Source: Macrostomum lignano (Eukaryota). Taken from it: a stretch of DNA of 29,798 nucleotides. The translations under genes were made by a program, and so were the position numbers. Position 1 is the stretch's first letter; every line of letters begins with the position of its first letter. The stretch spans positions 1 through 29,798 of the forward strand of contig NIVC01004971.1 in the NCBI GenBank assembly GCA_002269645.1, written 5' to 3'. Below the pieces are notes generated by a model, which did no database searches, was not told the DNA's origin, and worked only from the letters and a program-made list of their open reading frames with translations. Below, in pieces: positions 2,903-28,270 of this stretch.

Positions 2903-3306
2903 ATGAGCATCAGCGGCAACCTCAGCGACAGTAGCAGCGGCCACTGCGTGACGCTGGCCTACCTGCAGTCTGCCGGATTCGCCCTGCTGACAGCCGGCCT
3001 GGCGCTCATCAATGCCGCCGTCATTCTGGGCAACATCCTCGTCGTACTAGCGGCCTGCACTTCCACTAAGCTGCAGGGCGCCCTCACCAGCACCTTCGTA
3101 GTGAGCCTCGCCGTCAGCGACCTGCTGTTGGGCCTTGGCGTGCTTCCATTCTCCATCACTCACCAGGTGCTGCTGAAGCACTGGGTGTTCAGCTCGTGGT
3201 GGTGCCAGATCTGGCTAGCGCTGGATGTCTGGACTTGCACAGCCTCGATTCTTAATTTGGTGATCATCAGCTTGGATCGGTACATCAGCCTGCGGCATCC
3301 TCTGAA
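2903..3306 (+). CDS. Class A amine GPCR, alpha-adrenergic-like octopamine receptor (OAMB/Oct-alpha1 type), coding exon 1 (TM1-TM3)
   Basis: ATG at 2903; N-L-S sequon; GNILV (TM1), SLAVSDLL (TM2), WCQIWLALDVWTCTASILNL with the amine-binding Asp3.32, DRY; phase-2 donor AA|gtgagt at 3307. Confidence 0.93.
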
Positions 3307-3403
3307 GTGAGTCGCCACTTATCGATTCAATAAATTCAATTCTTCTCTAAGTGTCGGCCAGCAACAAGACCCTGTCCTCTTGTTTCATCATGCATAACCT
3401 GCC

Positions 3404-4020
3404 ATTCACTGAATCCACCCCTTCACTGAATCCGCCTTTTCACAGAATCCGCCCCTGCATCGAATCCGCCCCTTCACAGAATCCGCCCCTTCACAGAATC
3501 CGCCCCTTCACAGAATCCACCCCTTCACAGAATCCGCCCCTGCACAGAATCCGCCCCTTCACAGAATCCGCCCCTTCACAGAATCCGACTCTTCACAGAA
3601 TCCGCCCCTTCACAGAATCCGCCCCTTCACAGAATCCGCCCCTTCACAGAATCCGCCCCTTCACAGAATCCGCCCCTTCACAGAATCCGCCCCTTCACAG
3701 AATCCGCCTCTTCACAGAATCCGCCCCTTCACAGAATCCGACTCTTCACAGAATCCGCCCCTTCACAGAATCCGCCCCTTCACAGAATCCACCCCTTCAC
3801 AGAATCCGCCCCTTCACAGAATCCGCCCCTTCACAGAATCCACCCCTTCACAGAATCCGCCCCTTCACAGAATCCGCCTCTTCACAGAATCCGCCCCTTC
3901 ACAGAATCCGACCCTTCACAGAATCCGCCCCTTCACAGAATCCGACCCTTCACAGAATCCGACCCTTCACAGAATCCAACCCTTTACAGAATCCGCCCCT
4001 TCACAAAATCCGCCCCTTTC
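3404..4020. repeat. 17 bp intronic minisatellite (cacagaatccgcccctt) inside the GPCR intron 3307-4041
   Basis: Direct tandem repetition; it generates the spurious ORF 3351..4082. Confidence 0.97.
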
Positions 4021-4041
4021 GCAAACCACTCCCATTTCCAG

Positions 4042-4954
4042 GTATCCCAACCTCATGGACCGCAAGCGAGCCCGGCTACTAGTGGCCGGAGTCTGGGCCC
4101 TGGCCTGCGCCATCAGCCTGCCGACTCTGCTCAAACTGCTGCTCCAGACAGACGCCGATGAGAACGACAGTCTCCGCCGTTCCACCTGGCTAGAGCAGGA
4201 CAAGCGGACAGCCAACGAATCCGTGGGTGATTGCCTGCAGCTCGGACCCACCTGCACCATAGCGCACAGCACCCCCGGCTACATTGTCTATTCAGCGCTC
4301 GGCTCATTCTTCCTGCCCTTCCTCATCATGACCTATTTCTACGCGCACATCTTCGCCGCGGTGCATCGCACTTTGAAGGCCGGCCGTCGTGGCGCCGCCG
4401 AGAACGGCCAGCTCAGGATTCACCGAGGAGGTGGCGGCGGCGGCGGAGGGACCGCTAGCGGAGGCGGCGGCAGCGGAAGTGGCTGCGGAAGAGGAGAGAC
4501 GCTACTTTCGGCTCCAACAGGAAGCGGCGCCGTACCGCGCCAGGCCTCTTGGACAACGCTGGCAGCGACTGCTGCTACTAGGAGAGCGGCGCAGTTCACC
4601 TCTGGCGGCAGGTACGGCCGGGAGCTGAAGGCCGCCCGCATGCTGGCCATCATCTGCATCACCTTTGTCGGCTGCTGGGCCCCCTTTTTCTCTGTCTACC
4701 TGTATGGCGCCGTGTGCCCGGACTGCATCTCCGCCCTGGCCTTCGACATCTGCTTCTGGCTCGGCTACGTGAACAGCGCGCTGAACCCGCTCATCTACGC
4801 GCTGTTCTCTGCCGACTATCGGCGCGCATTCAAGACGCTGATTTTGCGCAGGCGACGCCGCCAGTACGACACAATCGGGACGCTGGCGAGGCGCGGCCTG
4901 CACGGCATGGGGGCGCTGGCGGGTGCCCGGCGGGACCAGCTAAACCAGGGCTGA
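4042..4954 (+). CDS. Octopamine-receptor-like GPCR, coding exon 2 (ICL2-TM7 and C-tail); spliced product ~438 aa
   Basis: Acceptor ccatttccag|g at 4041 restores HPLK-YPNLM in frame; GYIVYSALGSFF (TM5), LRIHRG, RELKAARMLAII, CWAPFF, FWLGYVNSALNPLIYALFS match OAMB-type motifs as I recall them; stop TGA 4952-4954. Confidence 0.93.
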
Positions 4955-6063: not shown

Positions 6064-7400
6064 TTGTTGGAGCTCAGGTCAGCGTTAGGAAGGCGAGGAA
6101 AGCAACCGTTTGGCCTTGGAGACAGAGGATCTAGAAAAGCTGCGCCGCTACTTCCATCGAAGTAGCCCGACTATTTTGCAGCAGGAGGTCTACTATGTAT
6201 TAGCCTTGCAGTTTGGCTTGCGTGGACGCGAACGGTTTCGTAAGCTAACTACGGATTCTATTGAGAGATGCAACATCAATGGGCGACGCGCATTCAGGCT
6301 GGCATCAATGGAAACCAAGACTGTTCGAGGAAGTTTAGAAGAGCGGACCTCAGAAGATAGGAAGCAGAGTGTGATTGTCGAAACCTTTGAAATAGGATGC
6401 CCCTACGAGTGTGTTGAGCTTTACCTGAGCAAGATCGAAGAGGCCAAGAGAAAAGAGGGAGTGTCGAGCTCCGTTGTGTTCATACGTCCCCGAGTACGCG
6501 GCTTTGCAGAGTCGTGGTATTTTGCTAAGCAGGTTGTAGGCGTCAACACTCTTGGGAACATGATGAGTGGCATCTCCAAAGCGGCTAATTTGAGCAAGAT
6601 TTATACTGGCCACTGTCTAAGAGTCACCCTGGCAACCGAGTTGAGTGCAGCTGGAGTGTCCCTGAGGGATATCAGCGCTGTAACGGGACACAAAACTGAA
6701 ACAGCTGCACAAAGGTACATTCGGAACAGCAGAAAGCGTGACGGAGAGATGGCTGGGCTGTCTGTAAGGATCAGTTCCATCGGCGAGGAAAAGAGCGCAA
6801 GGATAGAGAGCCCGCACGACGAGGTGCGTGTGCCGACGCCCGGCTCAGAGGTACCGGCTGATGCCTTGCTACCGGAGACCAGTGCTCAGGCCGATGTGCG
6901 ACAGCAATCATCTACAGCCACGAGGGCTGGAATGGAGATGCAAACGTTGGCTACAGCTATATCGGGCACATTCAACAACTGCCAATTCCACGTGCATATT
7001 TCGAACATGCCTTGATCCGGCGTACAGCTTGGACCGATTTATACTAAATCCGTTGATTGTTTTTTCATATTAAGTTTTTATAATGTTACAACTGCTAAAT
7101 ATAGCATTAAGTAGTTAGCTCAGACGTTGGGTTCGGCCATAGACATTCAAAGCGTGCAACAATCTGGCTTGATTGCTATACCCCTAAAAACCCCTCCAAA
7201 ATGATACAATGAGTGCTGAAGTAATATATATTTGGTGCAGCTCTGGCCTATCATGCCAGTCTGTCTTACTATCGAGCTCTTGGGTTTTTCCTTTAGGGTC
7301 GCAGCCCTTCTATGCACTTCGGCTTTACTGTCGAAGGCTTTACACAGTCTGAGCCATAGACAAAAAGGAAGTGTTAATGCCCAAAAGCTTAAGCCACAAC
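6064..7400 (+). mobile_element. 5'-truncated Crypton (tyrosine-recombinase DNA transposon) fragment
   Basis: Contains the YR ORF plus ~385 bp of 3' region with short hairpins; boundaries are approximate and set by the flanking minisatellites. Confidence 0.72.
6089..7015 (+). CDS. Crypton-type tyrosine recombinase (C-terminal catalytic part; no ATG start)
   Basis: EDLEKLRRYF, FGLRGRE (Arg), ETKT (Lys), YTGHCLR (HxxR), TGHK (His), QRY (Tyr), and C-terminal FNNCQFHV typical of metazoan Crypton/DUF3504-like proteins; frame opens after TAG 6086-6088, which doubles as a possible splice acceptor. Confidence 0.88.
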   Translation, partial: EGEESNRLALETEDLEKLRRYFHRSSPTILQQEVYYVLALQFGLRGRERFRKLTTDSIERCNINGRRAFRLASMETKTVRGSLEERTSEDRKQSVIVETFEIGCPYECVELYLSKIEEAKRKEGVSSSVVFIRPRVRGFAESWYFAKQVVGVNTLGNMMSGISKAANLSKIYTGHCLRVTLATELSAAGVSLRDISAVTGHKTETAAQRYIRNSRKRDGEMAGLSVRISSIGEEKSARIESPHDEVRVPTPGSEVPADALLPETSAQADVRQQSSTATRAGMEMQTLATAISGTFNNCQFHVHISNMP

Positions 7401-14863: not shown

Positions 14864-15988
14864 TCATCCATGGAAAAAATTGACAACAATTTTCTCTTTT
14901 AAGTGGCGGCAAAAAGATCTGAAAATGAAAACAAGAATAACGAACAAAACTTTGATTGTATACTCCGAAACCGAGGCACATGAAGCGGTGTTCTGAAATT
15001 GGCTTGAGCCACCATAGTCAACCGCAGCAATCCAGATGGCAATGGTGCAAATCACGGTACAGCAGACAGCAGCGAAGCATAGGCATGAAAACAACGCGCT
15101 CAGAATGACGATGCCCACTTTTGATAGCATTAACAGACAGCAGTAGACGGTCAATAGAAGTGGATAAATCAAACAGCAAAACGCGGCGATAGAAATGAGT
15201 ATAAAAGCACTTTTACTAAGTTTCTTACCGAATAGCTTTGAGGACCAACTTTCTATTTTCGATTTTGCGAGTGCTTGTGTGTGCTCCGCTAAGGTCTTGA
15301 AATTGATCTCTAAATTGCACTGCACTTTTTTGTGAGCCATATTTAACTTGATCCGCAAATCGCACTGCACTTCTTTGTGAACCATCGCACTCATCTCGCC
15401 AGAAATAAACTTCACCAGGTACCGAGGGGCTGCCTGCTCAGCTCGGTACACAATGTACTCATCGTTGAGTACACCTCCGCTGCTCTTAGTCTTCCGTTTA
15501 GCAAACGCAGAGTCGCAGCCCTCAGCTTGCAGCCGTACAATGCTGAGCCTGGGATCGGCTGCTTTGCAAACCAACGGTTTTCCGATAGCAACATCGCATA
15601 ACAGCAGGTACTTGGCTCCATTGTCGCGACAGTATTGAGCACTCTTGGTGCTATCGGTGGCGAAGTAGATTCCCGGACCGAACATGCCTCCACTACCGAC
15701 CTTGAATCCATCTTCGATAATTTTCTCGGCGTTTTGTTTCGTCGTCCCGTGAAAAAGCAGCTGCGGCTGGCGGTCGCTGGCGTGCAGTTCATTGAGACAG
15801 TTTCTCAGTTTGCGATCCAACTCGGAGTTTTGGATCCTCTCAATCGACTGGATCTGTATTCGGATTCCATGCTCCGGTTTGACATACCGCTCGACTCTGT
15901 CCCGAACTGTCAGATACTCTTGAATTGTGTCGTCACTGGTCTCGGTGAGAAGTTTCCGGCGAACTACTCTGCCTTGTATCTGATCTGG
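14864..15988 (-). CDS. PARP-like ADP-ribosyltransferase (H-Y-E triad) with C-terminal hydrophobic, Cys-rich membrane segments; 5' exon not resolved
   Basis: Frame is open from 15988 (after acceptor ...aatactttttag) to the stop at 14864; QIQSIERIQN, LLFHGT, GMFGPGIYFA, KSAQY, LLLCDVAIG, NDEYIVY..EQAAPRYLV; hydrophobic stretches AFILISIAAFCCLIYPLLLTVYCCLLML, VGIVILSALFSCLCFAAVCCTVICTIAIWIAAV and IKVLFVILVFIF. Confidence 0.88.
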   Translation of the reverse strand, partial: PDQIQGRVVRRKLLTETSDDTIQEYLTVRDRVERYVKPEHGIRIQIQSIERIQNSELDRKLRNCLNELHASDRQPQLLFHGTTKQNAEKIIEDGFKVGSGGMFGPGIYFATDSTKSAQYCRDNGAKYLLLCDVAIGKPLVCKAADPRLSIVRLQAEGCDSAFAKRKTKSSGGVLNDEYIVYRAEQAAPRYLVKFISGEMSAMVHKEVQCDLRIKLNMAHKKVQCNLEINFKTLAEHTQALAKSKIESWSSKLFGKKLSKSAFILISIAAFCCLIYPLLLTVYCCLLMLSKVGIVILSALFSCLCFAAVCCTVICTIAIWIAAVDYGGSSQFQNTASCASVSEYTIKVLFVILVFIFRSFCRHLKEKIVVNFFHG

Positions 15989-16469
15989 CTAAAAAGTATT
16001 ATCAAAGAGAGATCTATGATTAAATTGACTCGGATTGAGACTTTAAGCTCTTCCACACAGCCATCAATTGAAGGCAATTGTAGAGCGATTGATTACATTC
16101 ATACTTCACACATAATCGCAGGAGCAGGCACCCTGGCGCAACGTCTTTGGCGACATCGTCCCACGTTGCACTATACCAGCGCTTTTGATAGGAGGCAGAT
16201 CCAGTGTTGATCTTTTGATATGTTGTGCCTTTCTTATTGCTCCATCGATATTCATAAAGCTTTTCGTTCAGAAATAGTTTTAAAGGGAGGTTTCACCGAA
16301 AAAAATACACTACGGAGATAGGAAATTTCACGATTTTCAACACTAAAACAGTGATTGGGTCTCTTAACAGTGTCAGAGAAAGTTCTAATCACACTATTTT
16401 GTGCCTCACATGCTGCTCTGACGACGCATTAATCGATTTTTTATGTTAAATTGGTCTTATTGGAAAAAA

Positions 16470-16613
16470 CGTTTAAAATAATGATAAGAACTGAAGCAAT
16501 GCAGAGAGTTAAGTGTCTTGCTCAAGGACACAAATTGTTCCCGTGGGGTCGAGAATCGAACCCCCGACCTTTCAGTCGTGAGCCCGACGCTCTGACCGCT
16601 AGGCTACAACCCC
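16470..16613 (-). mobile_element. CORE-type tRNA-derived SINE (Val-CAC-like head)
   Basis: Minus strand: ggggttgtagcctagcgg (A box), ggttcgattc (B box), then tgtgtccttgagcaagacacttaactctctg, close to the MIR CORE segment tgtgaccttgggcaagtcacttaacctctctg as I recall it. Confidence 0.78.
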
Positions 16614-16659
16614 TCTATGCTAAACCCCCCTCTTTGGTGCAAAGCCCTAAATGAATGTT

Positions 16660-16735
16660 GCCATGTACGGAATGAATCGAACCTGGGGTCGCAATGCAAG
16701 AGTCAGACGCGTTTACCGCTGAGCTGCCCTGCCCC
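16660..16735 (-). mobile_element. Second tRNA-derived head (SINE-like)
   Basis: Minus strand gcagctcagcggtaaacgcg (A box) ... ccaggttcgattc (B box); resembles the head at 24265-24339. Confidence 0.62.
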
Positions 16736-18414
16736 TAATTTTAAATCTGTAAAGTACTTTTATTGCGTGCTTTGGGTAGCTATACGGATATTTGATTTAA
16801 TGCATGCACGCTCAAGTATTCACCTGACCGGCTGCATCATGCCAGCATTAAATTAATCCATTTCATAAGTTCACATACCTGGGATGCGGGTTGATTACCC
16901 ATGCCGCGATAAAAGTATTCGGACACTTAAATTAAACAAATATTTTGTTGATCATAACTAAAAACAATTAACCGATGGCTAAAGGTATACCTGTCTCTTT
17001 GATGAGTTAGTTCTTCTGCTTACAGTTTATGCAAGTTTTGTTTGGAGCTTGTGCCACAGATTTCCTGTCTTGACTAATAAAACTCTCTCGCAATTATAGA
17101 CTCAAAATTTGTAAAAAAATGTTATCAACTACACTACTTATATACTAAGAAGGTACAAGCCACTAGCCACTGATACTAGAATCGTTTCCCAGTGTACAAC
17201 TTATGCATTTACCTTGCGTACTGTTTCTAAGTCTGTCTAGCTCTAATTGCACGTACGCATTCGTGCAATACAAGGCTACTTTTGTTCGTTGTTTTGTTCG
17301 CCTTTCATTCGTCATGTTATGTGGAACTTCAGTTTTGCTCCAAAGTAATTTGCAGCATCTTTTATGTAATTTTTGTCCTACAAGATTTTGGGTTGCTTGT
17401 CGTAGATAGACGGATTGGAAATCACAGACTTACAGAAGTCAATTTCAATCATATTTGATCGCAGCCAATGTTAAATTGGGCGGAAGTTTTCGTTCTCAAA
17501 GGAACTTAGAATTACAGCTAAATCTTGTGATATCATAAAAACTCATTTGACGGGGTGGTAGCAAAGAAAGGAATGAGAAATTTTGAATGAACTAAATGTA
17601 GAAATTTTTGTATATAGTTGCTACTGTTACTTTCTTACGGAAAAGGATGCTTTAAAGCAAAAAAATTATCGGCCCCTGACAGCTAGCTGGCAGCCACCCC
17701 AAAGATCATATGATCTAGCCCAAGATGTCAGCACCCCTTTGAGAAGTGAAATCTCAGCAATTCCCCCTTGAGCCATGCAAAGGCTACTAAAGTAGAAGGA
17801 CGCAACACTCGAAATCTATGGAAAATGTTTTGAAGGCCACTTTTCCTAACCATGTCCTTTTTGAATGGATGGAGGGAGAGTGTTGGCTGAGGCAGTGCTG
17901 GCAGAGATTTAATCCGATGTGCAGACGATACGCTCTTATTTCCTAGAAGAAAGCAATTAAATAAGATGCCTCTATTATAGGTACAGCAAATTTTATAAAG
18001 CTTATAGACTTTCATTTTGCGCTACTCATAGTAATAGAAGCAGAGCCCGAGTGCCTTTCGATGAGCAGCAGTGCTGGCTGAAGTAAGTGCGCACTGTTTA
18101 TGCTGCTATATGAGCGGAATGACAAATTGAGTAATGAGTCATGCTGCTCACCCTCGCTTCAACTACGAGTATGGCGAAGCGCTCGTGCCCCAGCCTCCTC
18201 TCCGGCTGGCTTTCGAATTAACAAAAATTTCTTTTGAGTTTTCGCCTGCACATCATGCGGGCGGGCCGCGCATTGTTTCTGCTACTAAAATGGAAATTAC
18301 AGCAATTAACGATCCGGCAGAAGCAGTTGAGATGAAGAATGCGCGTAAGTGAACTCATTGAGTCCAAGATATTACTCAGGTACGCTTGTGCTGCAAATTT
18401 GACATGGCGTTCTC

Positions 18415-18876
<462 letters not shown>

Positions 18877-19389: not shown

Positions 19390-19594
19390 ATGCAACTGGT
19401 GTGCAAGGTGGCCAGGGCCTTGGCCACCACAGCTCTGATAATCGCAATCCTTCCCTATGAGGCTCGAGCACAGGACGTCTCGCCAGGAGTGGCAGCCGGG
19501 GTGACCTTCGCCGTGACGTTTATCGTCTGCGTATGCGTCTGCGTCATCCTCGTCTGCTACCTGCTGCGGCGAATGCGCCTGATGAAGAGGAGAT
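19390..19594 (+). CDS. TM-PDZ acidic-repeat gene, exon 1: signal peptide, ~6-residue ectodomain, TM helix, basic stop-transfer
   Basis: MQLVCKVARALATTALIIAILPYEARA-QDVSPG-VAAGVTFAVTFIVCVCVCVILVCYLL-RRMRLMKRR; phase-1 donor T|gtgaga at 19595. Confidence 0.7.
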
Positions 19595-19636
19595 GTGAGA
19601 GCTGGCTGCAAGGGCTTCGGGAGGAGTGGCATTAGC

Positions 19637-20470
19637 GGAGAGCATGAGGGGGAGATGGAGAGCATGAGGGGGAGAGGGAGAGCATGAGGGGGAGATAGAG
19701 AGCATGAGGGGGAGATGGAGAGCATGAGGGGGAGAGGGAGAGCATGAGGGGGAGATAGAGAGCATGAGGGGGAGATGGAGAGCATGAGGGGGAGAGGGAG
19801 AGCATGAGGGGGAGAGGGAGAGCATGAGGGGGGAGATGGAGAGCATGAGGGGGAGTGGGAGAGCATGAGGGGGAGATGGAGAGCATGAGGGGAAGAGGGA
19901 GAGCATGAGGGGGAGAGGGAGAGCATGAGGGGGAGATAGAGAGCATGAGGGGGAGAGGGAGAGCATGAGGGGGAGATGGAGAGCATGAGGGGGAGAGGGA
20001 AAGCATGAGGGGGAGAGGGAGAGCATGAGGGGGAGATGGAGAGCATGAGGGGGAGATAGAGAGCATGAGGGGGAGAGGGAGAACATGAGGGGGAGATGGA
20101 GAGCATGAGGGGGAGATGGAGAGCATGAGGGGGAGATGGAGAGCATGAGGGGGAGAGGGAGAGCATGAGGGGGAGAGGGAGAGCATGAGGGAGAGATGGA
20201 GAGCATGAGGGGGAGAGGGAAAGCATGAGGGGGAGAGGGAGAGCATGAGGGGGAGATGGAGAGCATGAGGGGGAGATAGAGAGCATGAGGGGGAGAGGGA
20301 GAACATGAGGGGGAGATGGAGAGCATGAGGGGGAGATGGAGAGCATGAGGGGGAGATGGAGAGCATGAGAGGGAGAGGGAGAGCATGAGGGGGAGAGGGA
20401 GAGCATGAGGGGGAGATGGAGAGCATGAGGGGGAGATGGAGAGCATGAGGGGGAGAGGGAGAAGAGCATG
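19637..20470. repeat. 20 bp purine-rich minisatellite (agcatgagggggagatggag) in intron 1
   Basis: agcatg at 19641, 19661, 19681, ... Confidence 0.97.
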
Positions 20471-20510
20471 AGAGGGTAGAGGGACAGGGATACAGTTCAC
20501 TTTAACCTAG

Positions 20511-20683
20511 TCCCTTTGTCGTCGCACCCTCCTTGGACAGCGAGCTCACACAGGTCCCGGTCCGGCGTCGAGAACACCGGCTTTGATTGGGTGGAGAACC
20601 GGCCCGCAACCACCGGTCGCCGAGCTGAGCAGAGCGGCGGCGCCTCAGTGCGGATGGTCAACGAGCAGGATTCTGCCAAAGTG
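20511..20683 (+). CDS. TM-PDZ acidic-repeat gene, exon 2
   Basis: Acceptor ttaacctag at 20510 (phase 1 matches); encodes FDWVENRPATTG, echoed by later WENLENRPVTG repeats; phase-0 donor gtgagc at 20684. Confidence 0.68.
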
Positions 20684-20719
20684 GTGAGCCAGCCCACAGA
20701 TTATCCTGTGAGCCAACCT

Positions 20720-21050
20720 GTGTTTCACCTGGTTCCCGGTGTTCACCTGATTCCCGGTGTTCACCTGGTTCCTGGTGTTCACCTGATTCCCGGTGTTCAC
20801 CTGATTCCCGGTGTTCATCTGGTTCCCGGTGTTCACCTGATTCCCGGTGTTCACCTGGTTCCCGGTGTTCACCTGGTTCCCGGTGTTCACCTGGTTCCCG
20901 GTGTTCACCTGGTTCCCGGTGTTCACCTGGTTCCGGTGTTCACCTGATTCCCGGTGTTCACCTGATTCCCGGTGTTCACCTGGTTCCCGGTGTTCACCTG
21001 ATTCCCGGTGTTCACCTGGTTCCCGGTGTTCACCTGGTTCCCAGTGTTCA
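20720..21050. repeat. 18 bp minisatellite (gtgttcacctggttcccg) in intron 2
   Basis: Direct reading. Confidence 0.97.
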
Positions 21051-21091
21051 GCTGTTCACTATCAAACCATTGTCTTCATCAACAACTTCAG

Positions 21092-21251
21092 CATGTCAAC
21101 AAGCCAAAGCCGGAGGTCAAGGATCTAATATCAGTTTGCGCCACCAAGCTTGAGGACTTGGAATTAAAGATTAAGCTGAGCAACAACATGGTCCTGGTGT
21201 CCAAGGACCCCGCGCACAGCTCGCTCTGCAGTCGGCAAGGCGTTCGAGCAG
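21092..21251 (+). CDS. TM-PDZ acidic-repeat gene, exon 3 (N-half of PDZ-like domain)
   Basis: Acceptor caacttcag at 21091 (phase 0); LELKIKLSNNMVLVSKDPAHSSLCSRQGVRA; phase-1 donor G|gtaatt at 21252. Confidence 0.72.
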
Positions 21252-21272
21252 GTAATTTCGTTGTCCTGATGT

Positions 21273-21419
21273 CAACCCCAACCCCAACCCCAACCCCAAC
21301 CCCAACCCCAACCCCAACCCCAACCCCAACCCCAACCCCAACCCAACCCCAACCCCAACCCCAACCCCAACCCCAACCCCAACCCCAACCTCAACCCTAA
21401 CCCCAACCTAAATCCTAAC
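21273..21419. repeat. (CCCCAA)n telomere-like hexamer repeat filling intron 3, ending in CCCTAA-like variants
   Basis: Direct reading. Confidence 0.96.
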
Positions 21420-21460
21420 AATTCCCTTGCTAACGAATGCCGGCCTCTCCACTGCCTTAG

Positions 21461-23781
21461 GCGACCGCATCGTGGCGATCCGGGTCGACCTAACAGCTGG
21501 CGAAGCGGCCGACGCGGTCGACCCCGATCATGTGAGCTTCCTGCTCGGCCTGGCCGGTTGCTACGGCCTCACAGTAGAATTCCAGCACCAGCAGCCAGCG
21601 ACTTCAGCCGCCGCCGCCGCCGCCGCCGCCCCGCCGCTGCCGCCGTCAACACCGTTGCGCGAGGCCTCGCGAAGCGTCGCCCTACCATCGATCGTTGTCT
21701 CCGAGGAGGCGCCGGCGCCTGCGCCTACAGGAGGGCCGCGGCTTCTGCTGGCCCGCGGCGGCGGAGTCCCGCAGGCGGCAGCTGGTGGCCAACTCGAGCG
21801 GGCCCTGCTGAACTCCGACTGGACGGAGGCGGAGCCACAGGAAGACGAATGGGTGGCACTGTCGGTGGATCTGATGCTGAAAGAGGAGGCCGACTCGCAC
21901 GCCTACGCTGTCATTGGCGAGGTGGCGGTCCCGAACCTCGACTTGTCGCTGGAACCCGGAGACGAAGGCAAAACCTGGCGCTCGTTGGGTGGCGCCGTTG
22001 AAGACGCGCTGACCGAGTCCACAGGCAGGCGCGGCTCCGCCTCGTCAGGTGGCACCTCGTCAGGCACGGCGAACACCCTGGTGGAGATGCCGCGGCCGCG
22101 CAGCGACGACAGCCTGTCAGCGTCCGGGGATGACGATCTGGACGAGGCCGACCTAGTGGTTCAGGCTGTTAGGAATGCCGACAAAGCGTTGTCGAATGCG
22201 GAATCCGCGGAAGTCGAACCGGAAGTGGAGATTGATGTTGAAGAAAAAGTCGAAGCTGCGGTTGACTTGGCAACTCATGCCGAAGTGGAATTCAATGGGG
22301 AAGTTGAAGTGGGCCTCAGACCGGAAGCTGATGTGGAACTAGAACTCGATTTTGAGAGCCAACCAGAGGTGGAGGCGGAAGTAAAATTCGATGTTGACGT
22401 CCGACCGAAAGTTGATGCGGAAGTGGAGCTGGATGCTAACTTACGACCAGAAGTTGAAGCGGAAGTAGACTTCGGTGTTGATATCCGACCGGAAGTTGAT
22501 GCAGAATTGGAACTTGATGTTGACGTTCGACAGGAGGCGGAAGTAGAATTCGGTGTTGATGTCCGACCGGAAGCGGAAGTAGAATTCGGTGATGTCCGAC
22601 CAGAGGTGGAAGCGGAAGTAGAATTCGATGTTGATGGCCGACCAGAGGTGGGGGCGGAAGTAGAATTCGGTGTTGATGTCCGACCAGAAGCGGAAGTAGA
22701 ATTCGGTGTTGATGTCCGACCGGAAGCGCAAGTAGAATTCGGTGTGATGTCCGACCGGAAGCGCAAGTAGAATTCGGTGTTGATGTCCGACCGGAAGCGC
22801 AAGTAGAATTCGGTGTTGATGTCCGTCCAGAAGCGGAAGTAGAATTCGGTGTTGATGTCCGACCGGAAGCGGAAGTAGAATTCGGTGTTGATGTCCGTCC
22901 AGAAGCGGAAGTAGAAATCGACGCTGATGCAGAAGTTGAAAGGGAATTGGAAGCGGATGCAAAAGTGGAAGTAGAATCGGAAGAAGAAATCGGATCTGAT
23001 ATTGAGATCAAATCGGGCGCTGAAGTAGACCTGGGTGTACAGGCCGAGGCGGAAGTCGACCTGGATGTACATGCTGAGGCGGAAGTCGACCTGGATGTAC
23101 AGGCTGAGGCGGAAGTCGACCTGGATGTACAGGCTGAGGCGGAAGTCGACCTGGATGTACAGGCCGAGGCGGAAGTCGACCTGAATGTACAGGCGGAGCT
23201 GGATTCGGACGCAGAGGAGATCGTAGAGGCCGCAGTCAGCTCGGTGGCGCAGTCGGCGCAGTCAATCAATCTAGAACGGAAGGCGCCCAAACTGGAAGTT
23301 CGAACCGAAGCCCCGGAAGTTAAAGAAGATATTGACGAGATTCAACGAGACGACGACATCGAGGAGGTCTCTATCGATGACGACACGCCGGAAGTCCGCA
23401 GCCTGGATGCGTCAGCGCCGGCTCGCTGGGTAGGCCGGGCCGAGTCCAGCGGCAGCCGCAGCAGCAACGAAAGCATCGACGACAACTCGGACGGAGAGGC
23501 CGGCAGCGACCGCCGGCTGCGAAAGGCAATACGCCAGGCGGCCAGAGCAGTTGAGAAAGATGCCGAAGACGGGGAGGCTGCGGCGGCATCGAGTAAGACG
23601 CCGAACTCTACGCGGGAGAAAACGGCAGAATGGCAAAGTTTGGAGAATCACCCGGTGACCGGAGGCCGGTGGGAGAATCTGGAGAATCGGCCGGTGACTG
23701 GAAGCCAGTGGGAGAATCTGGAGAATCGCCCGGTGACTGGAGGCCGGTGGGAAAACTTAAACAATCTGCCGGTTGATACAG
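21461..23781 (+). CDS. TM-PDZ acidic-repeat gene, exon 4 (C-half of PDZ, 12-aa RPEAEVEFGVDV repeats, 10-aa AEAEVDLDVQ repeats, 13-aa WENLENRPVTG repeats); one apparent -1 frameshift at ~22745
   Basis: Acceptor ctgccttag at 21460 gives G-DRIVAI; ORFs 21427..22770 and 22947..23816 join if one T is restored in ggtgt[t]gat; phase-1 donor G|gtaagt at 23782. Confidence 0.78.
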
Positions 23782-23980
23782 GTAAGTTGCATAATTGTAA
23801 AGTTATAAAGCGATAAAACACAAATTCACCTATTTACCATGCGTTCATTAACAATAATAACTGACAAAAGGAAAGTTCTAAATTTGACATGAAACCTCCA
23901 ATTTAATACTCTCTACTCAATCTGCTTTTACAAGCACCTCAACCGCTAGCCAGCTAACTTCTACACCCACCTCACTCCTT

Positions 23981-24339
23981 TTTTATTAGAGGCAGGGGGG
24001 TTGTGTGCACCCTGGCGCACTTTAAGCGACATAGGCACACAACCGGCGAGAGGCATTACTGCCCATTCCGCCGACTCCCCTGAGCAGGCATGCAAGCGCG
24101 CGGATACGTACGCAGGCACACACTCACACAGGAGTGTACAGCGGCCCTAACTTATTTATCGTTAGGCATGTACACTTCACTGCGCCTTGGGGGGTTGGCT
24201 CTCAAGGCCGTTAATTGCACGAGCAGAGCCAAACCGAGATTCCAATTCAGCCCCAAATTAATGTGAACCTGCACTTGGAATCGAGCCTGGGTCGCTGGCA
24301 CACCAGAGCAGCTGCGCTACCGCTGGGCTACGGCCCCCT
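23981..24339 (-). mobile_element. Apparently full-length ~360 bp tRNA-derived SINE with hairpin-rich body and A-rich tail, in intron 4
   Basis: Minus strand starts gggggccgtagcccagcggtagcgc (A box), ggctcgattcc (B box), ends tctaataaaaaa; flanked by direct repeat ccacctcactcctt (23967-23980, 24340-24353), which is also the local minisatellite unit. Confidence 0.75.
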
Positions 24340-24515
24340 CCACCTCACTCCTTGCACCCGGCTCACTCCTTACACCCACCTCACTCCTTGCACCCACCTC
24401 ACTCACTCCTTGCACCCTCCTCACTCCTTACACCCACCTCATTCCTTACACCCACCTAACTGCAATTACACCCACCTCAAGCCTTACAACCACTTCACTC
24501 CTTACACCCACCCGT
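24340..24515 (+). repeat. 18 bp minisatellite (cacctcactccttacacc)
   Basis: Direct reading; inverted counterpart at 25196-25440. Confidence 0.92.
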
Positions 24516-24620
24516 GTCAACCCACAATAACAAACTGATCCAACTACATCGCTCAGTAACAGAGATAGGTATACACACAACTGACTCTAAAATTAAAAAA
24601 CTAATTGGTTCTCTCCACAG

Positions 24621-25147
24621 TCCAAGAGCCGGAGTTGGCAGCGTCTATCGTACAGCATCCGAAGCCGCAACAGAAAGCGTCCAGAATTCCCCAGCGCTCA
24701 TTAAGCTCAATTCTCAGGGACGTCGAATCCGCAACTGTAGACCTGGTAAATAACGAGGCACAGGCCGCTGCCGCGGCCGCCGCCGAGGACAACCACAGGG
24801 GCGCGGAGTCGCCACCAGTTATCGACGAGACCAACATCAAAGCGACCCAGGCGCCGGTTCCGGTCGTCCAGCTGGACTTTCAGGCGCTGCAGGAGGCGGA
24901 GGACGAGGCGGGCGAGCCCGAGTCGCCGCTGCTGGATCCGGAGCTGGTGCGGGAGATCCAGGCCGGCGCTGAGGGAATCTGGGACGACGATGAGGAGAAC
25001 GGCGTGGAGGAAGGTGACGCTCTCCAGCTGGAGGAGTCGGAGGGCGAACTGTCGGACAGCTTTCAGGAGTTTCTCAACAATGAGGAACTGCTGGAGCAGG
25101 ACGGATTCAGCCGTATGATACGAAAGCTGGAAGAGTCAGACGCCTGA
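24621..25147 (+). CDS. TM-PDZ acidic-repeat gene, last coding exon (acidic tail)
   Basis: Acceptor ttctctccacag at 24620 (phase 1 matches); GC3-rich codons; ends FSRMIRKLEESDA, TGA 25145-25147. The exon sum of 3386 nt plus 1 restored base equals 1129 codons. Confidence 0.76.
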
Positions 25148-25195: not shown

Positions 25196-25440
25196 TGAGG
25201 TGGTTGTAAGGAGTAAGGTGGGTGTGAGGTGGGTGTAAGATTAGTGAGGTGGGTGTGAGGAGTGAGGTGGGTGTAAGGAGTGAGGTGGGTGTGAGGAGTG
25301 AGGTGGGTGTGAGGAGTGAGGTGCCTGTAATTACAGTTAGGTGGGTGTAAGGAGTGAAGTGGGTGTGAGGAGTGAGATGGGTGTAAGGAGTGAAGTGGGT
25401 GTAAGGAGTGAGGTGGGTGTAAGGAGTGAGGTGGGTGGGT
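25196..25440 (-). repeat. Same 18 bp minisatellite in inverted orientation (ggtgtaaggagtgaggtg)
   Basis: Reverse complement of the 24340-24515 unit, including shared interruptions. Confidence 0.92.
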
Positions 25441-26028
25441 ACAGTTGAAGTAGCTAAAAAGTATCTCATGACTATTTACGCTCGTACCCTGTGCCCCTCT
25501 GCTCTTTGTAGGCAGCGATCGATAATGGATGACCTTACACATACTTGTTACGGGCAGCTGCATGCAGAGGAATGATCATAGAAGAAATGAATTTCTCACA
25601 AATAGCTTGTACATGTAACGCCAGTTATCCACTCAAATCAGTCAGTCGCGTATGTCATACACGATTCCATAATAGATAAAAAAATGTCCGACTATACTAC
25701 TAACCACAGTTTTCAATCTTGCTTATCTGAAAATTTTGTTGTGTTGAATGTTTGCATATAAAATACCCGTCCCCCACTTTGCCTTATTGCATGCGCTTTC
25801 TATTTTTGAACTTTGCTCATGTGGGTGTCTGAGCGTATTAGTCCAATTCGCATCAGCCTGTCAACATTTTACGCTCGTAACACTTCATGACGATGACTTA
25901 CTCATGACTTAACAGCAGAATAAAAGTGCCATGCAATTTTTCATTGAACTATGAATATTTGAAGCTTGACGACTAGCTATAATTGTAGTAAATTCCTGCT
26001 TTCATCGATTAATTAGACAAGATAACTT

Positions 26029-27020
26029 GAGGATCTGGGGGGGGGGGGCTGGCCCAGCAACTGAGGATCTGGGAGGCTGGCCCAGCAACTGAGGATCTGG
26101 GAGGCTGGCCCAGCAACTGAGGATCTGGGAGGCTGGCCCAGCAACTGAGGATCTGGGAGGCTGGCCCAGCAACAGAGGATCTTGGAGGCTGGCCCAACAA
26201 CTGAGGATCTGGGAGGCTGGCCCAGCAACAGAGGATCTTGGTGGCTGGCCCAGCAACTGAGGATCTGAGAGGCTGGCCCAGCAACTGAAGACCTGGGAGG
26301 CTGGCCCAGCAACTGAGGATCTGAGAGGCTGGCCCAGCAACTGAGGATCTGGGAGGCTGGCCCAGCAACTGAGGATCTGGAAGGCTGGCCCAGCAACTGA
26401 GGATCTGGAAGGCTGACCCAGCAACTGAGGATCTGGAAAGCTGGCCCAGCAACTGAGGATCTGGGAAACTGGCGGACTGAGGATCTGGGAGGCTGGCCCA
26501 GCAACTGAGGATCTGAGAGGCTGGCCCAGCAACTGAAGATCTGGGAGGCTGGCCCAGCAACTGAGGATCTGAGAGGCTGGCCCAGCAACTGAAGACCTGG
26601 GAGGCTGGCCCAGCAACTGAGGATCTGAGAGGCTGGCCCAGCAACTGAAGACCTGGGAGGCTGGCCCAGCAACTGAGGATCTGGGAGGCTGGCCCAGCAA
26701 CTGAGGATCTGAGAGGCTGGCCCAGCAACTGAAGACCTGGGAGGCTGGCCCAGCAACTGAGGATCTGAGAGGCTGGCCCAGCAACTGAAGACCTGGGAGG
26801 CTGGCCCAGCAACTGAGGATCTGGGAGGCTGGCCCAGCAACTGAGGATCTGAGAGGCTGGCCCAGCAACTGAAGACCTGGGAGGCTGGCCCAGCAACTGA
26901 GGATCTGAGAGGCTGGCCCAGCAACTGAAGACCTGGGAGGCTGGCCCAGCAACTGAAGATCTGTGAGGCTGGCCCAGCAACTGAGGATCTGGAAGGCTGG
27001 CCCAGCAACTGAGGATCTGG
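26029..27020. repeat. 28 bp minisatellite (gaggatctgggaggctggcccagcaact), ~35 copies
   Basis: Direct reading; source of the three long minus-strand ORFs at 26002-27125. Confidence 0.98.
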
Positions 27021-27841: not shown

Positions 27842-28215
27842 TCAAAGCGATTGGAACATGTTGCTCTTCTCAGAGAAAGTTCCCGGCTTCATCTTGACCT
27901 GGGTGCGCTTGTTCTGGCCTATCTTGGCCCGCATCTCCTCCAGGCTGATGTTGCCGACTGGGTCGCTGCCTTTGCCGCCGCCGCCGTTCTGGGCTGCGGC
28001 TGCCGGGGCCGCGGCTTTGGCGACTGGCGCCGGCGGGGTCGGCGACGGGCTTCGGCGACTGGCGCCGGCGGGGTCGGCGACGGGCTTCGGCGACTGGCGC
28101 CGGCGGGTCGGCGACGGGGCTTCGGCGACTGGCGCTGGCGGGTCGGGGACGAGCGGCGCTGCTGCTGCGGACTCGGAGCCGGAGATGCAGTTTGCGATGA
28201 AACGGCACTCAGCTG
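27842..28215 (-). CDS. Terminal coding exon of an unidentified gene (Pro/Ala-rich linker, C-terminus ISLEEMRAKIGQNKRTQVKMKPGTFSEKSNMFQSL*)
   Basis: Acceptor ctcccttattcag at 28216; frame open for 124 codons to TGA at 27844-27842; strongly C/G-ending codons; absent from the ORF track because it lacks an early start codon. Confidence 0.66.
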
Positions 28216-28270
28216 CTGAATAAGGGAGGTGGAGGTCATGGGCGTGAGCAGATGAGGCTGATGCTATGTG

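What the first reader, a model, noticed from the sequence alone, without database searches (positions are those of the whole stretch)
19390..25147. Unusual receptor-like protein: signal peptide, almost no ectodomain, one TM, PDZ-like domain, then ~900 aa of acidic repeats
Seen: five exons with mutually consistent splice phases (1,0,1,1), which the ORF track shows only as unconnected pieces. After cleavage only about 6 residues (QDVSPG) would be outside the cell. Exons 3-4 give LELKIK...VLVSK...SSLCSRQGVRAGDRIVAI...DHVSFLLGLAG..GLTVEF, matching the PDZ pattern (G-L-R-x-G-D-R-I) with a non-canonical GLGF loop. Tandem repeats with alternating hydrophobic/acidic residues follow (PEAEVEFGVDVR, AEAEVDLDVQ). 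Known: AHNAK and periaxin are PDZ-plus-repeat scaffolds but have no TM. Inference: a previously undescribed membrane-tethered, AHNAK-analogous polyanionic scaffold (spacer, cation buffer or beta-repeat filament). This is my strongest novelty candidate here.
Basis: partly seen in the sequence, partly recalled or inferred. Interest (0 to 1): 0.75.

Follow-up and report, generated by a model that had tools for sequence, protein, structure and literature searches.

The report
Membrane-anchored PDZ-like acidic-repeat flatworm protein
This is a real gene of the flatworm Macrostomum lignano, already in public databases, that encodes a membrane-anchored protein with a weak PDZ-like module and a long acidic repeat tail; it has no detectable relatives and no known function, so it is an interesting orphan but not a new kind of system.

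Summary
The window is the whole contig NIVC01004971.1 of the Macrostomum lignano Mlig_3_7 assembly. The five-exon gene is real. GenBank annotates a gene at exactly 19390-25147 (+): Mlig031930.g2/g3, PAA46243.1/PAA48277.1, "hypothetical protein". UniProt auto-names it "PDZ domain-containing protein".

The exon-2 acceptor is 20541, not 20511.

As assembled, the frame stops at 22768-22770. A near-identical sister contig has the missing T and gives an intact 1118-aa protein, so this is probably an assembly error.

The anatomy holds:
- Signal-peptide-like segment, about 6 external residues, one strong TM and a basic stop-transfer stretch.
- About 1050 cytosolic residues with net charge -168.
- About 350 aa of 12/14/10-residue repeats with alternating hydrophobic and acidic residues.

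PDZ support is weak and local. Pfam PDZ_6 scores 14.6 bits against a cutoff of 27. hhalign gives 58% probability over 21 columns, but that score is far above shuffles. The GLGF loop is absent and AlphaFold was uninformative.

No homologues were found outside this species. Repeat-only hits are unrelated proteins. Homology to AHNAK/periaxin is not supported.

Function is inferred only: a membrane-tethered polyanionic scaffold or spacer.

The parts
19390..19594 (+). Exon 1. It holds the ATG, a signal-peptide-like segment (aa 1-27, ...PYEARA|Q), 6 putative external residues (QDVSPG), a TM segment (aa 34-59) and the basic stop-transfer RRMRLMKRR. It ends in phase 1.
   Evidence: Sequence and splice donor. 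Hydropathy. Identical N-terminus in annotated P0002 and P0067. Best codon-usage frame with GC3 0.75.
19595..20540 (+). Intron 1, almost entirely a 20-nt minisatellite (19637-20462, 41 copies).
   Evidence: Its length differs between the two sister contigs (946 against 1061 nt).
20541..20683 (+). It encodes a Ser/Arg/Gly-rich linker.
   Evidence: P0002 and P0067 read MKRR|SSSHRSRSG. The acceptor sequence ccttggacag|CG was located at 20531-20541. This exon has the weakest coding signal of the five.
21092..21251 (+). Exon 3, the first half of the PDZ-like module (…LISVCATKLEDLELKIKLSNNMVLVSKDPAHSSLCSRQGVRAG).
   Evidence: The extended hhalign alignment places betaA to alphaA here.
21461..23781 (+). 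Exon 4, the large exon. It encodes the second half of the PDZ-like module (DRIVAIRVDL…GLTVEFQ), a roughly 200-aa low-complexity linker, the acidic repeat arrays, an acidic tail and the WENL repeats.
   Evidence: In sister contig L001 this exon is one uninterrupted 801-codon ORF.
22740..22770 (+). Frame break. One T is missing at 22745/6 (CGGTGTGATG against CGGTGTTGATG), which gives a premature stop at 22768-22770 as assembled.
   Evidence: This T is the only CDS difference from sister contig L001 across 3.36 kb.
22319..22920 (+). Array of 36/42-nt coding repeats giving 12- and 14-residue units (PEAEVEFGVDVR, PEVEAEVDFGVDIR).
   Evidence: TRF. Differences between units concentrate at codon position 3 (87 of 147 and 26 of 44). 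AF2 predicts a low-confidence all-beta meander.
23022..23198 (+). Array of 30-nt coding repeats giving 10-residue units (AEAEVDLDVQ), about 6 copies.
23641..23752 (+). Three 39-nt coding repeats (WENLENRPVTGGR), each carrying a W-x-x-L core.
24621..25147 (+). Exon 5, the acidic C-terminal 175 residues ending …FSRMIRKLEESDA, plus the stop codon.
   Evidence: Identical in P0002. Largely present in P0001 from the older assembly.

Best explanation
Shown: this is gene Mlig031930 of the flatworm Macrostomum lignano. It is a transcript-supported five-exon gene present in at least two nearly identical genomic copies. The intact product is about 1118 aa; the annotated versions have 1011-1026 aa because repeats are collapsed.

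The window copy carries a single-T deletion in the repeat array. This is most likely a consensus error of the long-read assembly.

Inferred from sequence: the protein enters the secretory-pathway membrane through a cleavable signal peptide or, equivalently for topology, a hairpin. It is held by one TM helix with essentially no lumenal or extracellular part. It exposes about 1050 cytosolic residues, in this order:
- a short basic and Ser-rich linker;
- one small PDZ-like module with a degenerate peptide-binding loop;
- a very acidic arm (net charge -168) whose core is about 350 residues of 10-14-residue units with strictly alternating hydrophobic and acidic side chains.

Most likely mechanism (inference): it is a membrane-tethered scaffold or spacer. 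The PDZ-like module docks or dimerises with a partner at the membrane surface. The polyanionic arm is beta-strand-prone, and may be disordered unless counter-ions neutralise it. It projects from the membrane as an electrostatic spacer or as a cation- or basic-protein-binding surface.

The gene appears restricted to the Macrostomum lineage.

The confidence figure is for the whole statement. The identity and gene-model part is about 0.95, and the scaffold/spacer mechanism is about 0.35.
For: - Identity and annotation. The contig length of 29798 equals the window length, and the annotated gene ends at 19390 and 25147.
- Transcript basis of the annotation: the Mlig_3_7 annotation was built from RNA-seq with StringTie/TACO plus a de novo transcriptome (PMC5730564).
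- Junctions.
- Coding signal in all exons.
- Repeat differences concentrated at third codon positions.
- Frameshift and intact sister copy.
- Topology: hydropathy and a +6 flank after the TM.
- PDZ-like motif: PDZ_6 is the only Pfam family reported for the sub-segments (E 0.03-0.11). hhalign against 18 Pfam-verified PDZ domains gives P 1e-4 and score 27.5, while 300 shuffles reach at most 16.1. The PDB search hits PDZD3 in the same register at E = 1. UniProt auto-names the protein a PDZ protein.
- Acidic alternating repeats.
- All-beta prediction for the repeats (pLDDT 53.8, pTM 0.52), with weak beta-solenoid fold matches.
- Lineage restriction.
Against: - No experimental or expression data were found for this gene.
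- The PDZ assignment is below every curated threshold and rests on about 21 aligned columns. The carboxylate-binding GLGF loop is replaced by LEDLELKI.
- AF2 of the PDZ-like module was uninformative (pLDDT 36.8).
- Signal-peptide cleavage and TM topology were not run through a dedicated predictor.
- The repeat structure prediction has low confidence, and no fold match is significant (best E 1.7).
- With -102 net charge over 350 residues the repeat region may simply be disordered.
- The function is entirely inferred.
- The frameshift could be real in this copy.
Confidence: 0.45

Rival explanations
1. Organelle-autophagy-receptor-like protein. A single-pass anchor in an organelle membrane carries a long, net-negative cytosolic disordered region with LC3/Atg8-interacting W-x-x-L motifs. 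Such a protein would fragment portions of that organelle and deliver them to lysosomes, as TEX264, SEC62 and FAM134B do.
For: [quoted passage not shown]
- Here there is a TM anchor and a cytosolic charge of -168.
- Six W-x-x-L cores occur where 0.73 are expected. Two of them (DEWVAL at aa 298, AEWQSL at aa 892) fit the extended LIR pattern in an acidic context.
Against: - Extended-LIR matches are not enriched over shuffles (3 against 1.1, P = 0.10).
- Three of the six W-x-x-L cores are copies of one repeat.
- The tail is four times longer than any receptor IDR listed in that paper (47-250 residues).
- This reading does not explain the regular beta-type repeats or the PDZ-like module.
- No Atg8-binding or localisation data exist.
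Confidence: 0.08
2. Divergent true homologue of the vertebrate AHNAK/periaxin family, which has an N-terminal PDZ, a giant exon of beta-strand repeats and a scaffold function. Under this reading the flatworm protein secondarily gained a TM anchor.
For: - The order is the same: small exons encode a PDZ-like module and one large exon encodes the repeats (for AHNAK; here).
- After GD-x-I-V-x the sequence reads A-I-R-V-D-L and lacks the usual N-G, as in periaxin (S-A-R-V-F-F) and AHNAK (G-A-T-I-Y-F). hhalign uses the same gap.
- Pairwise BLASTP to the periaxin PDZ (verified as 4cmz) gives E 0.003 over 49 residues.
Against: - No BLASTP alignment to the AHNAK PDZ.
- Neither 4cmz nor 4cn0 appears in a PDB-wide search at E <= 10.
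- Repeat units are 10-14 residues and acidic (K 1.4%), against 128/165-residue units in AHNAK and AHNAK2.
- The exhaustive search found no AHNAK-like protein among the hits.
- AHNAK and periaxin are known only from vertebrates (background knowledge).
Confidence: 0.04
3. Fast-evolving, lineage-specific low-complexity gene with no PDZ fold. Under this reading the GVRAGDRIVAI match is a short chance or convergent motif and the repeats are a recently expanded coding minisatellite under weak constraint. The window copy may be a young pseudogene.
For: - No homologues outside the species.
- Pfam is below threshold, and AF2 gives no fold.
- The repeat core has very different codon usage (GC3 0.37 against about 0.75 elsewhere) and near-identical units, typical of recent expansion in a genome that is 15% tandem repeat.
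- A frameshift is present in the window copy.
Against: - The gene is transcribed and spliced.
- The ORF is intact over 1118 codons in the sister copy.
- Older, diverged repeat units differ mostly at third codon positions while keeping the hydrophobic/acidic alternation.
- The PDZ-profile score is about 9 SD above shuffles, and the extended alignment places all PDZ secondary-structure elements in order.
- The ORF stays open for 2 kb downstream of the frameshift.
Confidence: 0.25
4. Membrane-tethered high-capacity cation (Ca2+/Mg2+) or polyamine buffer. The acidic faces of the repeat strands would bind cations, which would also drive folding of the array into a beta-solenoid or sheet.
For: - There are 256 Asp and Glu residues in 1050 cytosolic residues, and net charge is -102 over the 350-aa repeat core.
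- The strict alternation gives one acidic and one hydrophobic face per strand.
- AF2 predicts strands of 8-13 residues joined by RP/G turns.
- The weak fold matches are beta-helix proteins.
- Pfam noise hits are all beta-barrel or beta-helix families, namely MspA, BBP2_2 and Bactofilin.
Against: - The predicted topology places the arm in the cytosol, where free Ca2+ is low. Known high-capacity Ca2+ buffers sit in the ER/SR lumen (background knowledge).
- No EF-hand or other Ca2+ motif was found.
- All structural evidence is low confidence.
Confidence: 0.12

Closest known systems
AHNAK / AHNAK2 / periaxin (vertebrate PDZ-plus-repeat scaffolds; PDZ structures 4CMZ and 4CN0)
   Same: A PDZ-type module lies N-terminal to a very long array of short beta-prone repeats rich in P-E-V-D. 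Small exons encode the N-terminus and one large exon encodes the repeats. The PDZ variant lacks the usual N-G after the GD-x-I-x-x strand.
   Different: The flatworm protein has a signal peptide and TM anchor. Its repeats are 10-14 residues and strongly acidic rather than 128/165-residue Lys-rich units. It is 1.1 kaa long, not 1.4-5.9 kaa. Sequence similarity is marginal to periaxin (E 0.003 pairwise) and absent to AHNAK. There is no evidence of common descent.
Canonical PDZ domains (Pfam PF00595, PF17820, PF13180)
   Same: The alphaA-betaD-betaE core S-x-x-x-x-x-G-V-R-A-G-D-R-I-V-A-I aligns with the PDZ consensus pA…G-L-x-x-GD-x-I-l-x-V. The module is about 85 residues long, and predicted strands and helices follow the PDZ order.
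   Different: It is below all Pfam thresholds. There is no GLGF carboxylate-binding loop. Depending on the alignment, it has either an insertion or a shortened alphaB. The fold is unverified.
Single-pass organellophagy receptors such as TEX264 and SEC62 (membrane anchor plus negatively charged cytosolic IDR plus LIR; PMC12431859)
   Same: It has a minimal lumenal part, a single TM anchor, a long net-negative cytosolic region and W-x-x-L motifs far from the membrane.
   Different: The tail is much longer and more regular, and contains a PDZ-like module. The LIR-like motifs are not statistically enriched, and there is no functional evidence.
Titin PEVK and other P/E/V-rich repeat proteins retrieved by the exhaustive search (spidroin, fungal Hyr cell-wall protein, MAP1B-like)
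   Same: Composition and short-period repeats. They matched only the repeat zone (query aa about 240-430) at E 1e-44 to 1e-3.
   Different: They carry unrelated flanking domains (Spidroin_N, Hyphal_reg_CWP, MBL_MAP1B, PhoD) and none has a PDZ or the same anchor. The resemblance is compositional, not homologous.

Membership tests
PDZ domain (Pfam PF00595 / PF17820 / PF13180) | Scores at or above the curated Pfam gathering threshold | tested here: not met
   The whole protein and aa 1-228 gave no PDZ hit at E <= 10. Sub-segments hit only PDZ_6 at 12.7-14.6 bits against a cutoff of 27, over 13 residues.
PDZ domain (Pfam PF00595 / PF17820 / PF13180) | Conserved alphaA-betaD core (…pA…G-φ-x-x-GD-x-I-φ-x-φ) | tested here: met
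   hhalign against 18 Pfam-verified PDZ domains gives score 27.5, P 9.8e-5 and 21 columns. 300 shuffles give mean 10.1, SD 1.8 and maximum 16.1. The reversed sequence scores 9.6, and other segments of the protein score 7-13.
PDZ domain (Pfam PF00595 / PF17820 / PF13180) | Carboxylate-binding loop (R/K-x-x-x-G-L-G-F) before betaB | tested here: not met
   The aligned position reads K-L-E-D-L-E-L-K-I, with no Gly-φ-Gly-φ.
PDZ domain (Pfam PF00595 / PF17820 / PF13180) | Six-stranded beta-sandwich with two helices | tested here: inconclusive
   Single-sequence AF2 gave pLDDT 36.8. The order of predicted elements is compatible with PDZ, but no homologues were available for an MSA.
AHNAK / periaxin family | N-terminal PDZ detectably related to the AHNAK2/periaxin PDZ (which share more than 50% identity with each other) | tested here: not met
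   4cmz and 4cn0 are absent from the PDB phmmer search at E <= 10. BLASTP to periaxin gives E 0.003 (31% over 49 aa) and to AHNAK gives no alignment.
AHNAK / periaxin family | Central repeat units of about 128 aa (AHNAK) or 165 aa (AHNAK2), Lys-rich | tested here: not met
   Units are 10, 12 and 14 aa. Composition is E 24%, D 11% and K 1.4%, with net charge -102 over 350 aa. AHNAK features are taken from PMC10682155.
AHNAK / periaxin family | Soluble scaffold without a membrane anchor | tested here: not met
   A signal-peptide-like segment and a 26-residue TM are encoded by exon 1, which is joined to the rest in P0002 and P0067.
Type I single-pass membrane protein with cleavable signal peptide | n/h/c signal peptide with small residues at -3/-1, then a TM followed by a positive cytosolic flank | tested here: met
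   MQLVCKVAR / ALATTALIIAIL / PYEARA|Q. The TM at aa 34-59 has a hydropathy peak of 3.7, followed by RRMRLMKRR. This was judged by rule. SignalP and DeepTMHMM were not available, so cleavage itself is untested.
Organellophagy receptors (functional class, PMC12431859) | Membrane-tethering module plus cytosolic region of net negative charge | tested here: met
   TM anchor. Cytosolic part has net charge -168 over 1050 aa. Class definition.
Organellophagy receptors (functional class, PMC12431859) | [quoted passage not shown] | tested here: inconclusive
   Pattern matches occur at aa 298, 892 and 1028, but they are not enriched over shuffles (P 0.10). W-x-x-L is enriched, partly through repeat copies. 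Binding is not testable here.

The most novel reading that the evidence does not exclude
A flatworm-specific class of membrane-anchored polyanionic proteins. Under this reading the 10-14-residue units with alternating hydrophobic and acidic residues fold, perhaps with cations, into a regular beta-solenoid or beta-ribbon that projects from an organelle or plasma-membrane surface. The array would be organised by a degenerate, dimerising PDZ-like module. It would act as a structural spacer, or as an autophagy-receptor-like organelle-remodelling device through its W-x-x-L motifs. This would be a convergent, membrane-bound counterpart of AHNAK/periaxin.
Probability: 0.1. Interest if true: 0.6.

Novelty: new variant of a known kind. 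Interest (0 to 1): 0.3.

Why it matters
If the architecture is functional, it would be an unusual way to build a scaffold. A PDZ-type module would be fixed directly to a membrane by a TM helix with no ectodomain, and it would carry a very long, regular polyanionic arm. That would interest people who study membrane-proximal scaffolds, intrinsically disordered or beta-repeat proteins, and lineage-specific genes in flatworms.

M. lignano has RNAi, in situ hybridisation and transgenesis, so the function is directly testable.

On present evidence it is an uncharacterised orphan protein that is already deposited in public databases. Such low-complexity orphans are common in this repeat-rich, recently polyploid genome, so the immediate significance is modest.

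A practical point is that the public models of this gene are imperfect. Repeats are collapsed to give 1011-1026 aa instead of 1118 aa, and this contig carries a probable 1-nt assembly error.

Tried and rejected
1. **MspA porin.** The full protein hits Pfam MspA above its cutoff (40.4 bits, E 3.6e-10). I rejected it. The hit covers only 54 of 179 profile positions inside the tandem repeats, sits among other sub-threshold beta-barrel and beta-helix hits, and reflects the alternating pattern and repetition.
2. **Amnionless.** The match (E 0.0025-0.027, below cutoff) covers only the TM and juxtamembrane stretch. Rejected.
3. **Word-index homologue searches.** Searches with aa 1-428 and aa 1-218 returned nothing. 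They did not return the protein's own database entry either, so they say only that no other close relative exists.
4. **Exhaustive HMMER search.** The N-terminal 180 residues were therefore never searched exhaustively.
5. **AF2 of the PDZ-like region.** Run without an MSA it was uninformative. AF2 of the repeats was low confidence, and Foldseek gave no significant match.
6. **Repeat-zone hits.** I checked them for a shared architecture. They are spidroin, fungal Hyr protein, MAP1B-like, PhoD-like and similar proteins, so they are not homologues.
7. **P0001.** This protein ("WW domain-containing protein") is a fragmentary older-assembly model of the same gene with frameshifted stretches. It is not an independent homologue.
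8. **Expression information.** The gene id is absent from the searchable literature and from the held supplements of three M. lignano expression papers.
9. **Conservation between the two genomic copies.** They are too similar to compare exons with introns (98.7% over 10.8 kb; CDS identical apart from one T).
10. **Rebuilding the annotated CDS.** A brute-force attempt to obtain the 1011-aa CDS from the window with two deletions failed. The annotated product needs at least three gaps in the repeat arrays. P0067 contains an "EFEF" junction, as expected if an aligner placed a GT..AG gap inside the array. These gaps look like artefacts of collapsed repeats.
11. **Other scans.** Rfam found nothing in the window. 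The bacterial promoter and terminator scan is irrelevant for this eukaryotic sequence.

Full report
**Where the window comes from.** A search with the C-terminal part of the model returned one protein, a Macrostomum lignano UniRef entry. An exhaustive HMMER search with the first-frame part of exon 4 returned a 1011-aa protein, P0002, at 82% identity. The shortfall from 100% is due to missing repeats.

An exact look-up shows P0002 is GenBank PAA46243.1 / PAA48277.1, "hypothetical protein BOX15_Mlig031930g2/g3". It is also UniProt A0A267DHR2, auto-named "PDZ domain-containing protein". A 1026-aa version, P0067 (A0A1I8HLA4), comes from the older assembly.

The gene lies on two contigs of GCA_002269645.1 (Mlig_3_7). 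One of them, NIVC01004971.1, is 29798 bases long. Its stored range 9390-29798 is identical to the window, so the window is that contig. The annotated gene occupies window positions 19390-25147, exactly the coordinates of the finding.

The Mlig_3_7 annotation was built from RNA-seq (StringTie/TACO) plus a de novo transcriptome (PMC5730564). The annotated junctions therefore rest on transcripts.

**Gene model.** P0002 and P0067 reproduce three junctions residue for residue: 20683/21092 (…DSAKV|HVNKPK…), 21251/21461 (…GVRAG|DRIVAI…) and 23781/24621 (…LPVDT|VQEPEL…).

Exon 1 is joined to exon 2 in both models, but at a different acceptor. They read MKRR|SSSHRSRSG, which corresponds to ccttggacag|CGAGC at 20540/20541. 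The two choices differ by 30 nt in frame.

A codon-usage model trained only on the neighbouring GPCR and PARP genes scores the proposed frame best in every exon, with GC3 0.70-0.76 and no stops. Exon 2 is the weakest.

**The frame break.** On the raw sequence exon 4 (2321 nt) does not stay open. One repeat unit at 22740 reads CGGTGTGATG where every neighbouring unit reads CGGTGTTGATG. The frame then runs into a stop at 22768-22770.

On the sister contig (L001) exon 4 is one uninterrupted 801-codon ORF. Its spliced product of 1118 aa is 100% identical to the window model once one T is added. Across 3.36 kb of CDS that T is the only difference between the two copies. The introns differ by two substitutions and by minisatellite length.

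The most likely explanation is a homopolymer error in the long-read consensus. A very young lesion in one of several gene copies cannot be excluded.

The deposited 1011-aa and 1026-aa products lack 107 and 92 residues of repeats. They must skip the frameshift through gaps placed inside the arrays. P0067 even shows an "EFEF" join, as expected from a GT..AG gap inside the unit. The 1118-aa product is the better estimate.

**Anatomy of the protein (1118-aa numbering).**
- **aa 1-27:** MQLVCKVAR-ALATTALIIAIL-PYEARA, a classical n/h/c signal-peptide layout with Ala at -3 and -1.
- **aa 28-33:** QDVSPG.
- **aa 34-59:** a strongly hydrophobic segment with hydropathy up to 3.7.
- **aa 60-68:** RRMRLMKRR.

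Whether or not the first segment is cleaved, the positive-inside rule puts everything after residue 60 in the cytosol and leaves 6 to 12 residues outside. The N-terminus is an anchor and not a receptor ectodomain. No signal-peptide or TM predictor was available, so cleavage is an inference.

**The PDZ-like module (about aa 125-205, split by intron 3).** The evidence is mixed.
- Pfam gives no PDZ hit on the whole protein.
- On sub-segments the only family reported is PDZ_6, at 12.7-14.6 bits (cutoff 27) over 13 residues.
- A PDB sequence search gives PDZD3 at E = 1, in the right register.
- I built a profile from 18 PDZ domains, all of which Pfam confirmed as PDZ. hhalign gives 58% probability, P 9.8e-5 and score 27.5 over 21 columns (SLCSRQG-VRAGDRIVAIR-VDL).
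- 300 shuffles of the candidate average 10.1 +/- 1.8 with a maximum of 16.1. The reversed sequence and other segments of the protein score 7-13.
- The relaxed alignment places betaA to betaF in PDZ order over about 85 residues, but with low confidence. The GLGF loop is replaced by LEDLELKI.
- AlphaFold without an MSA gave pLDDT 36.8.

The module is therefore PDZ-like at motif level, and the fold is unproven.

**The tail.**
- aa 206-415 are low-complexity sequence (poly-Ala, Pro-rich, acidic).
- aa 416-765 are tandem units of 14, 12 and 10 residues: PEVEAEVDFGVDIR, PEAEVEFGVDVR and AEAEVDLDVQ.
- 60% of adjacent residue pairs are hydrophobic next to acidic, against 30 +/- 2% in shuffles.
- Net charge is -102 over these 350 residues, and the whole cytosolic part carries -168.
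- Differences between units fall mainly on third codon positions (87 of 147, 26 of 44, 10 of 14). This argues that the peptide pattern, and not just the DNA repeat, is maintained.
- The most homogeneous units use AT-ending codons (GC3 0.37 against about 0.75 elsewhere), a sign of recent expansion.
- AlphaFold predicts an all-beta meander of 8-13-residue strands at low confidence (pLDDT 53.8, pTM 0.52). Foldseek finds nothing significant; the weak top matches are beta-helix proteins.
- Downstream lie three WENLENRPVTGGR units and an acidic C-terminus ending EESDA.

**Relatives.** No protein outside M. lignano matched the N-terminal, middle or C-terminal non-repeat parts. The other 64 hits of the exhaustive search cover only the repeat zone. 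They belong to unrelated families: spidroin, fungal Hyr cell-wall protein, a MAP1B-like protein, a PhoD-like phosphatase and an Ig-repeat protein. None has a PDZ.

One caveat applies.

**How it probably works.** What is shown is a transcribed, spliced, lineage-restricted gene for a membrane-anchored, overwhelmingly cytosolic and extremely acidic protein.

My best inference is a membrane-tethered scaffold or spacer. The PDZ-like module would dock or dimerise at the membrane surface. In periaxin and AHNAK2 the PDZ serves dimerisation rather than peptide binding (Han and Kursula 2014, cited). The polyanionic, beta-prone arm would project from the membrane as an electrostatic spacer or a binding surface for cations or basic proteins.

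The rivals are these:
- **Orphan low-complexity gene with no PDZ fold.** This is the most serious rival.
- **Cation buffer.** The cytosolic topology argues against the classical lumenal Ca2+-store role.
- **Organellophagy-receptor-like protein.** A membrane anchor plus a net-negative cytosolic region plus a LIR is the defining layout in PMC12431859. The protein has DEWVAL, AEWQSL and 3x WENL. However, extended-LIR matches are not enriched (P 0.10), and the W-x-x-L excess partly reflects repeat copies.
- **True AHNAK/periaxin homologue.** The evidence for this is very thin.

**Comparison with AHNAK and periaxin.** The resemblance is one of layout: a PDZ-type module, then a huge exon of P/E/V/D-rich beta-prone repeats. 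A small detail is shared too, the missing N-G after the GD-x-I-x-x strand.

The defining features tested here fail:
- There is no detectable relation to the solved AHNAK2 and periaxin PDZ domains in a database-wide search.
- The pairwise E-value to periaxin is only 0.003, and there is no alignment to AHNAK.
- Units are 10-14 residues rather than 128/165.
- The charge is acidic instead of basic.
- A TM anchor is present.

The protein may work somewhat like these scaffolds, but it cannot be filed as a family member.

**Verdict.** It needs three corrections: the exon-2 acceptor, the frame break and the extent of the repeats.

The protein is not undescribed as a sequence. It is deposited and auto-labelled as a PDZ protein. 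It is uncharacterised, apparently restricted to Macrostomum, and has an uncommon combination of parts.

I rate it a new variant of a known kind (membrane-anchored PDZ-type scaffold with a repeat tail), with modest interest. The function is testable in this model animal. Nothing found here points to a new mechanism, and repeat-rich orphans are common in this genome.

Noticed in passing
window 24335-24512 and 25221-25443: The last exon (24621-25147) is bracketed by the same 18-nt minisatellite in opposite orientations: CCACCTCACTCCTTACAC in intron 4 and its reverse complement just after the stop codon. The best arms are 110 nt long and 86% complementary. In the pre-mRNA this could pair across the exon. 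The significance is unknown.
   Followed up: partly
window 19637-20462, 20724-21054, 21273-21408, 24340-24512; also 18415-18876 and 26043-27000: Every intron of the gene is mostly minisatellite: a 20-mer x41, an 18-mer x18, CAACCC x23 and another 18-mer. The flanks hold (AGAT)x115 and a 28-mer x16+. Array lengths differ between the two sister contigs. This fits the 15% tandem-repeat content reported for the genome.
   Followed up: partly
window 2843-3310 and 4055-4954 (+): Two exons of a rhodopsin-family GPCR (7tm_1, E 6e-27 and 6e-29) are separated by an intron filled with a coding-looking tandem repeat at 3351-4082.
   Followed up: partly
window 6110-7015 (+): A 301-aa ORF with Phage_integrase and DUF3504 matches, which looks like a Crypton-type tyrosine-recombinase element or a domesticated copy.
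   Followed up: no
window 14864-15820 (-), annotated gene about 14864-16902: A PARP catalytic-domain gene (382-aa annotated product) whose C-terminal part is a Cys-rich, very hydrophobic, multi-TM-like tail. It lies immediately upstream of the finding in both sister contigs.
   Followed up: partly
window 27919-28239 (-); L001 17727-25538 (-): The terminal exon of a convergent downstream gene. On the sister contig that gene is annotated as a 276-aa protein with a bona fide Pfam PDZ domain (PF00595). Its PDZ exons lie beyond the end of the window. I could not test whether it is related to the PDZ-like module of the finding.
   Followed up: no
L001 22523-25489 (-): A minisatellite array about 3 kb long is open in all three minus-strand frames (ORFs of 844-988 aa of GPENSGSGR…TRKLGIRES units). 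It lies inside an intron of the neighbouring gene on the sister contig. It shows how misleading long ORFs are in this genome.
   Followed up: no
window 22319-23198 against P0002 and P0067: The public protein models of this gene differ in repeat number (1011, 1026 and 1118 aa). P0067 contains an EFEF join, consistent with an aligner-made GT..AG gap inside the array. P0001 contains frameshifted stretches (RPPPRTTTGAR). The deposited models should be treated as approximate.
   Followed up: partly
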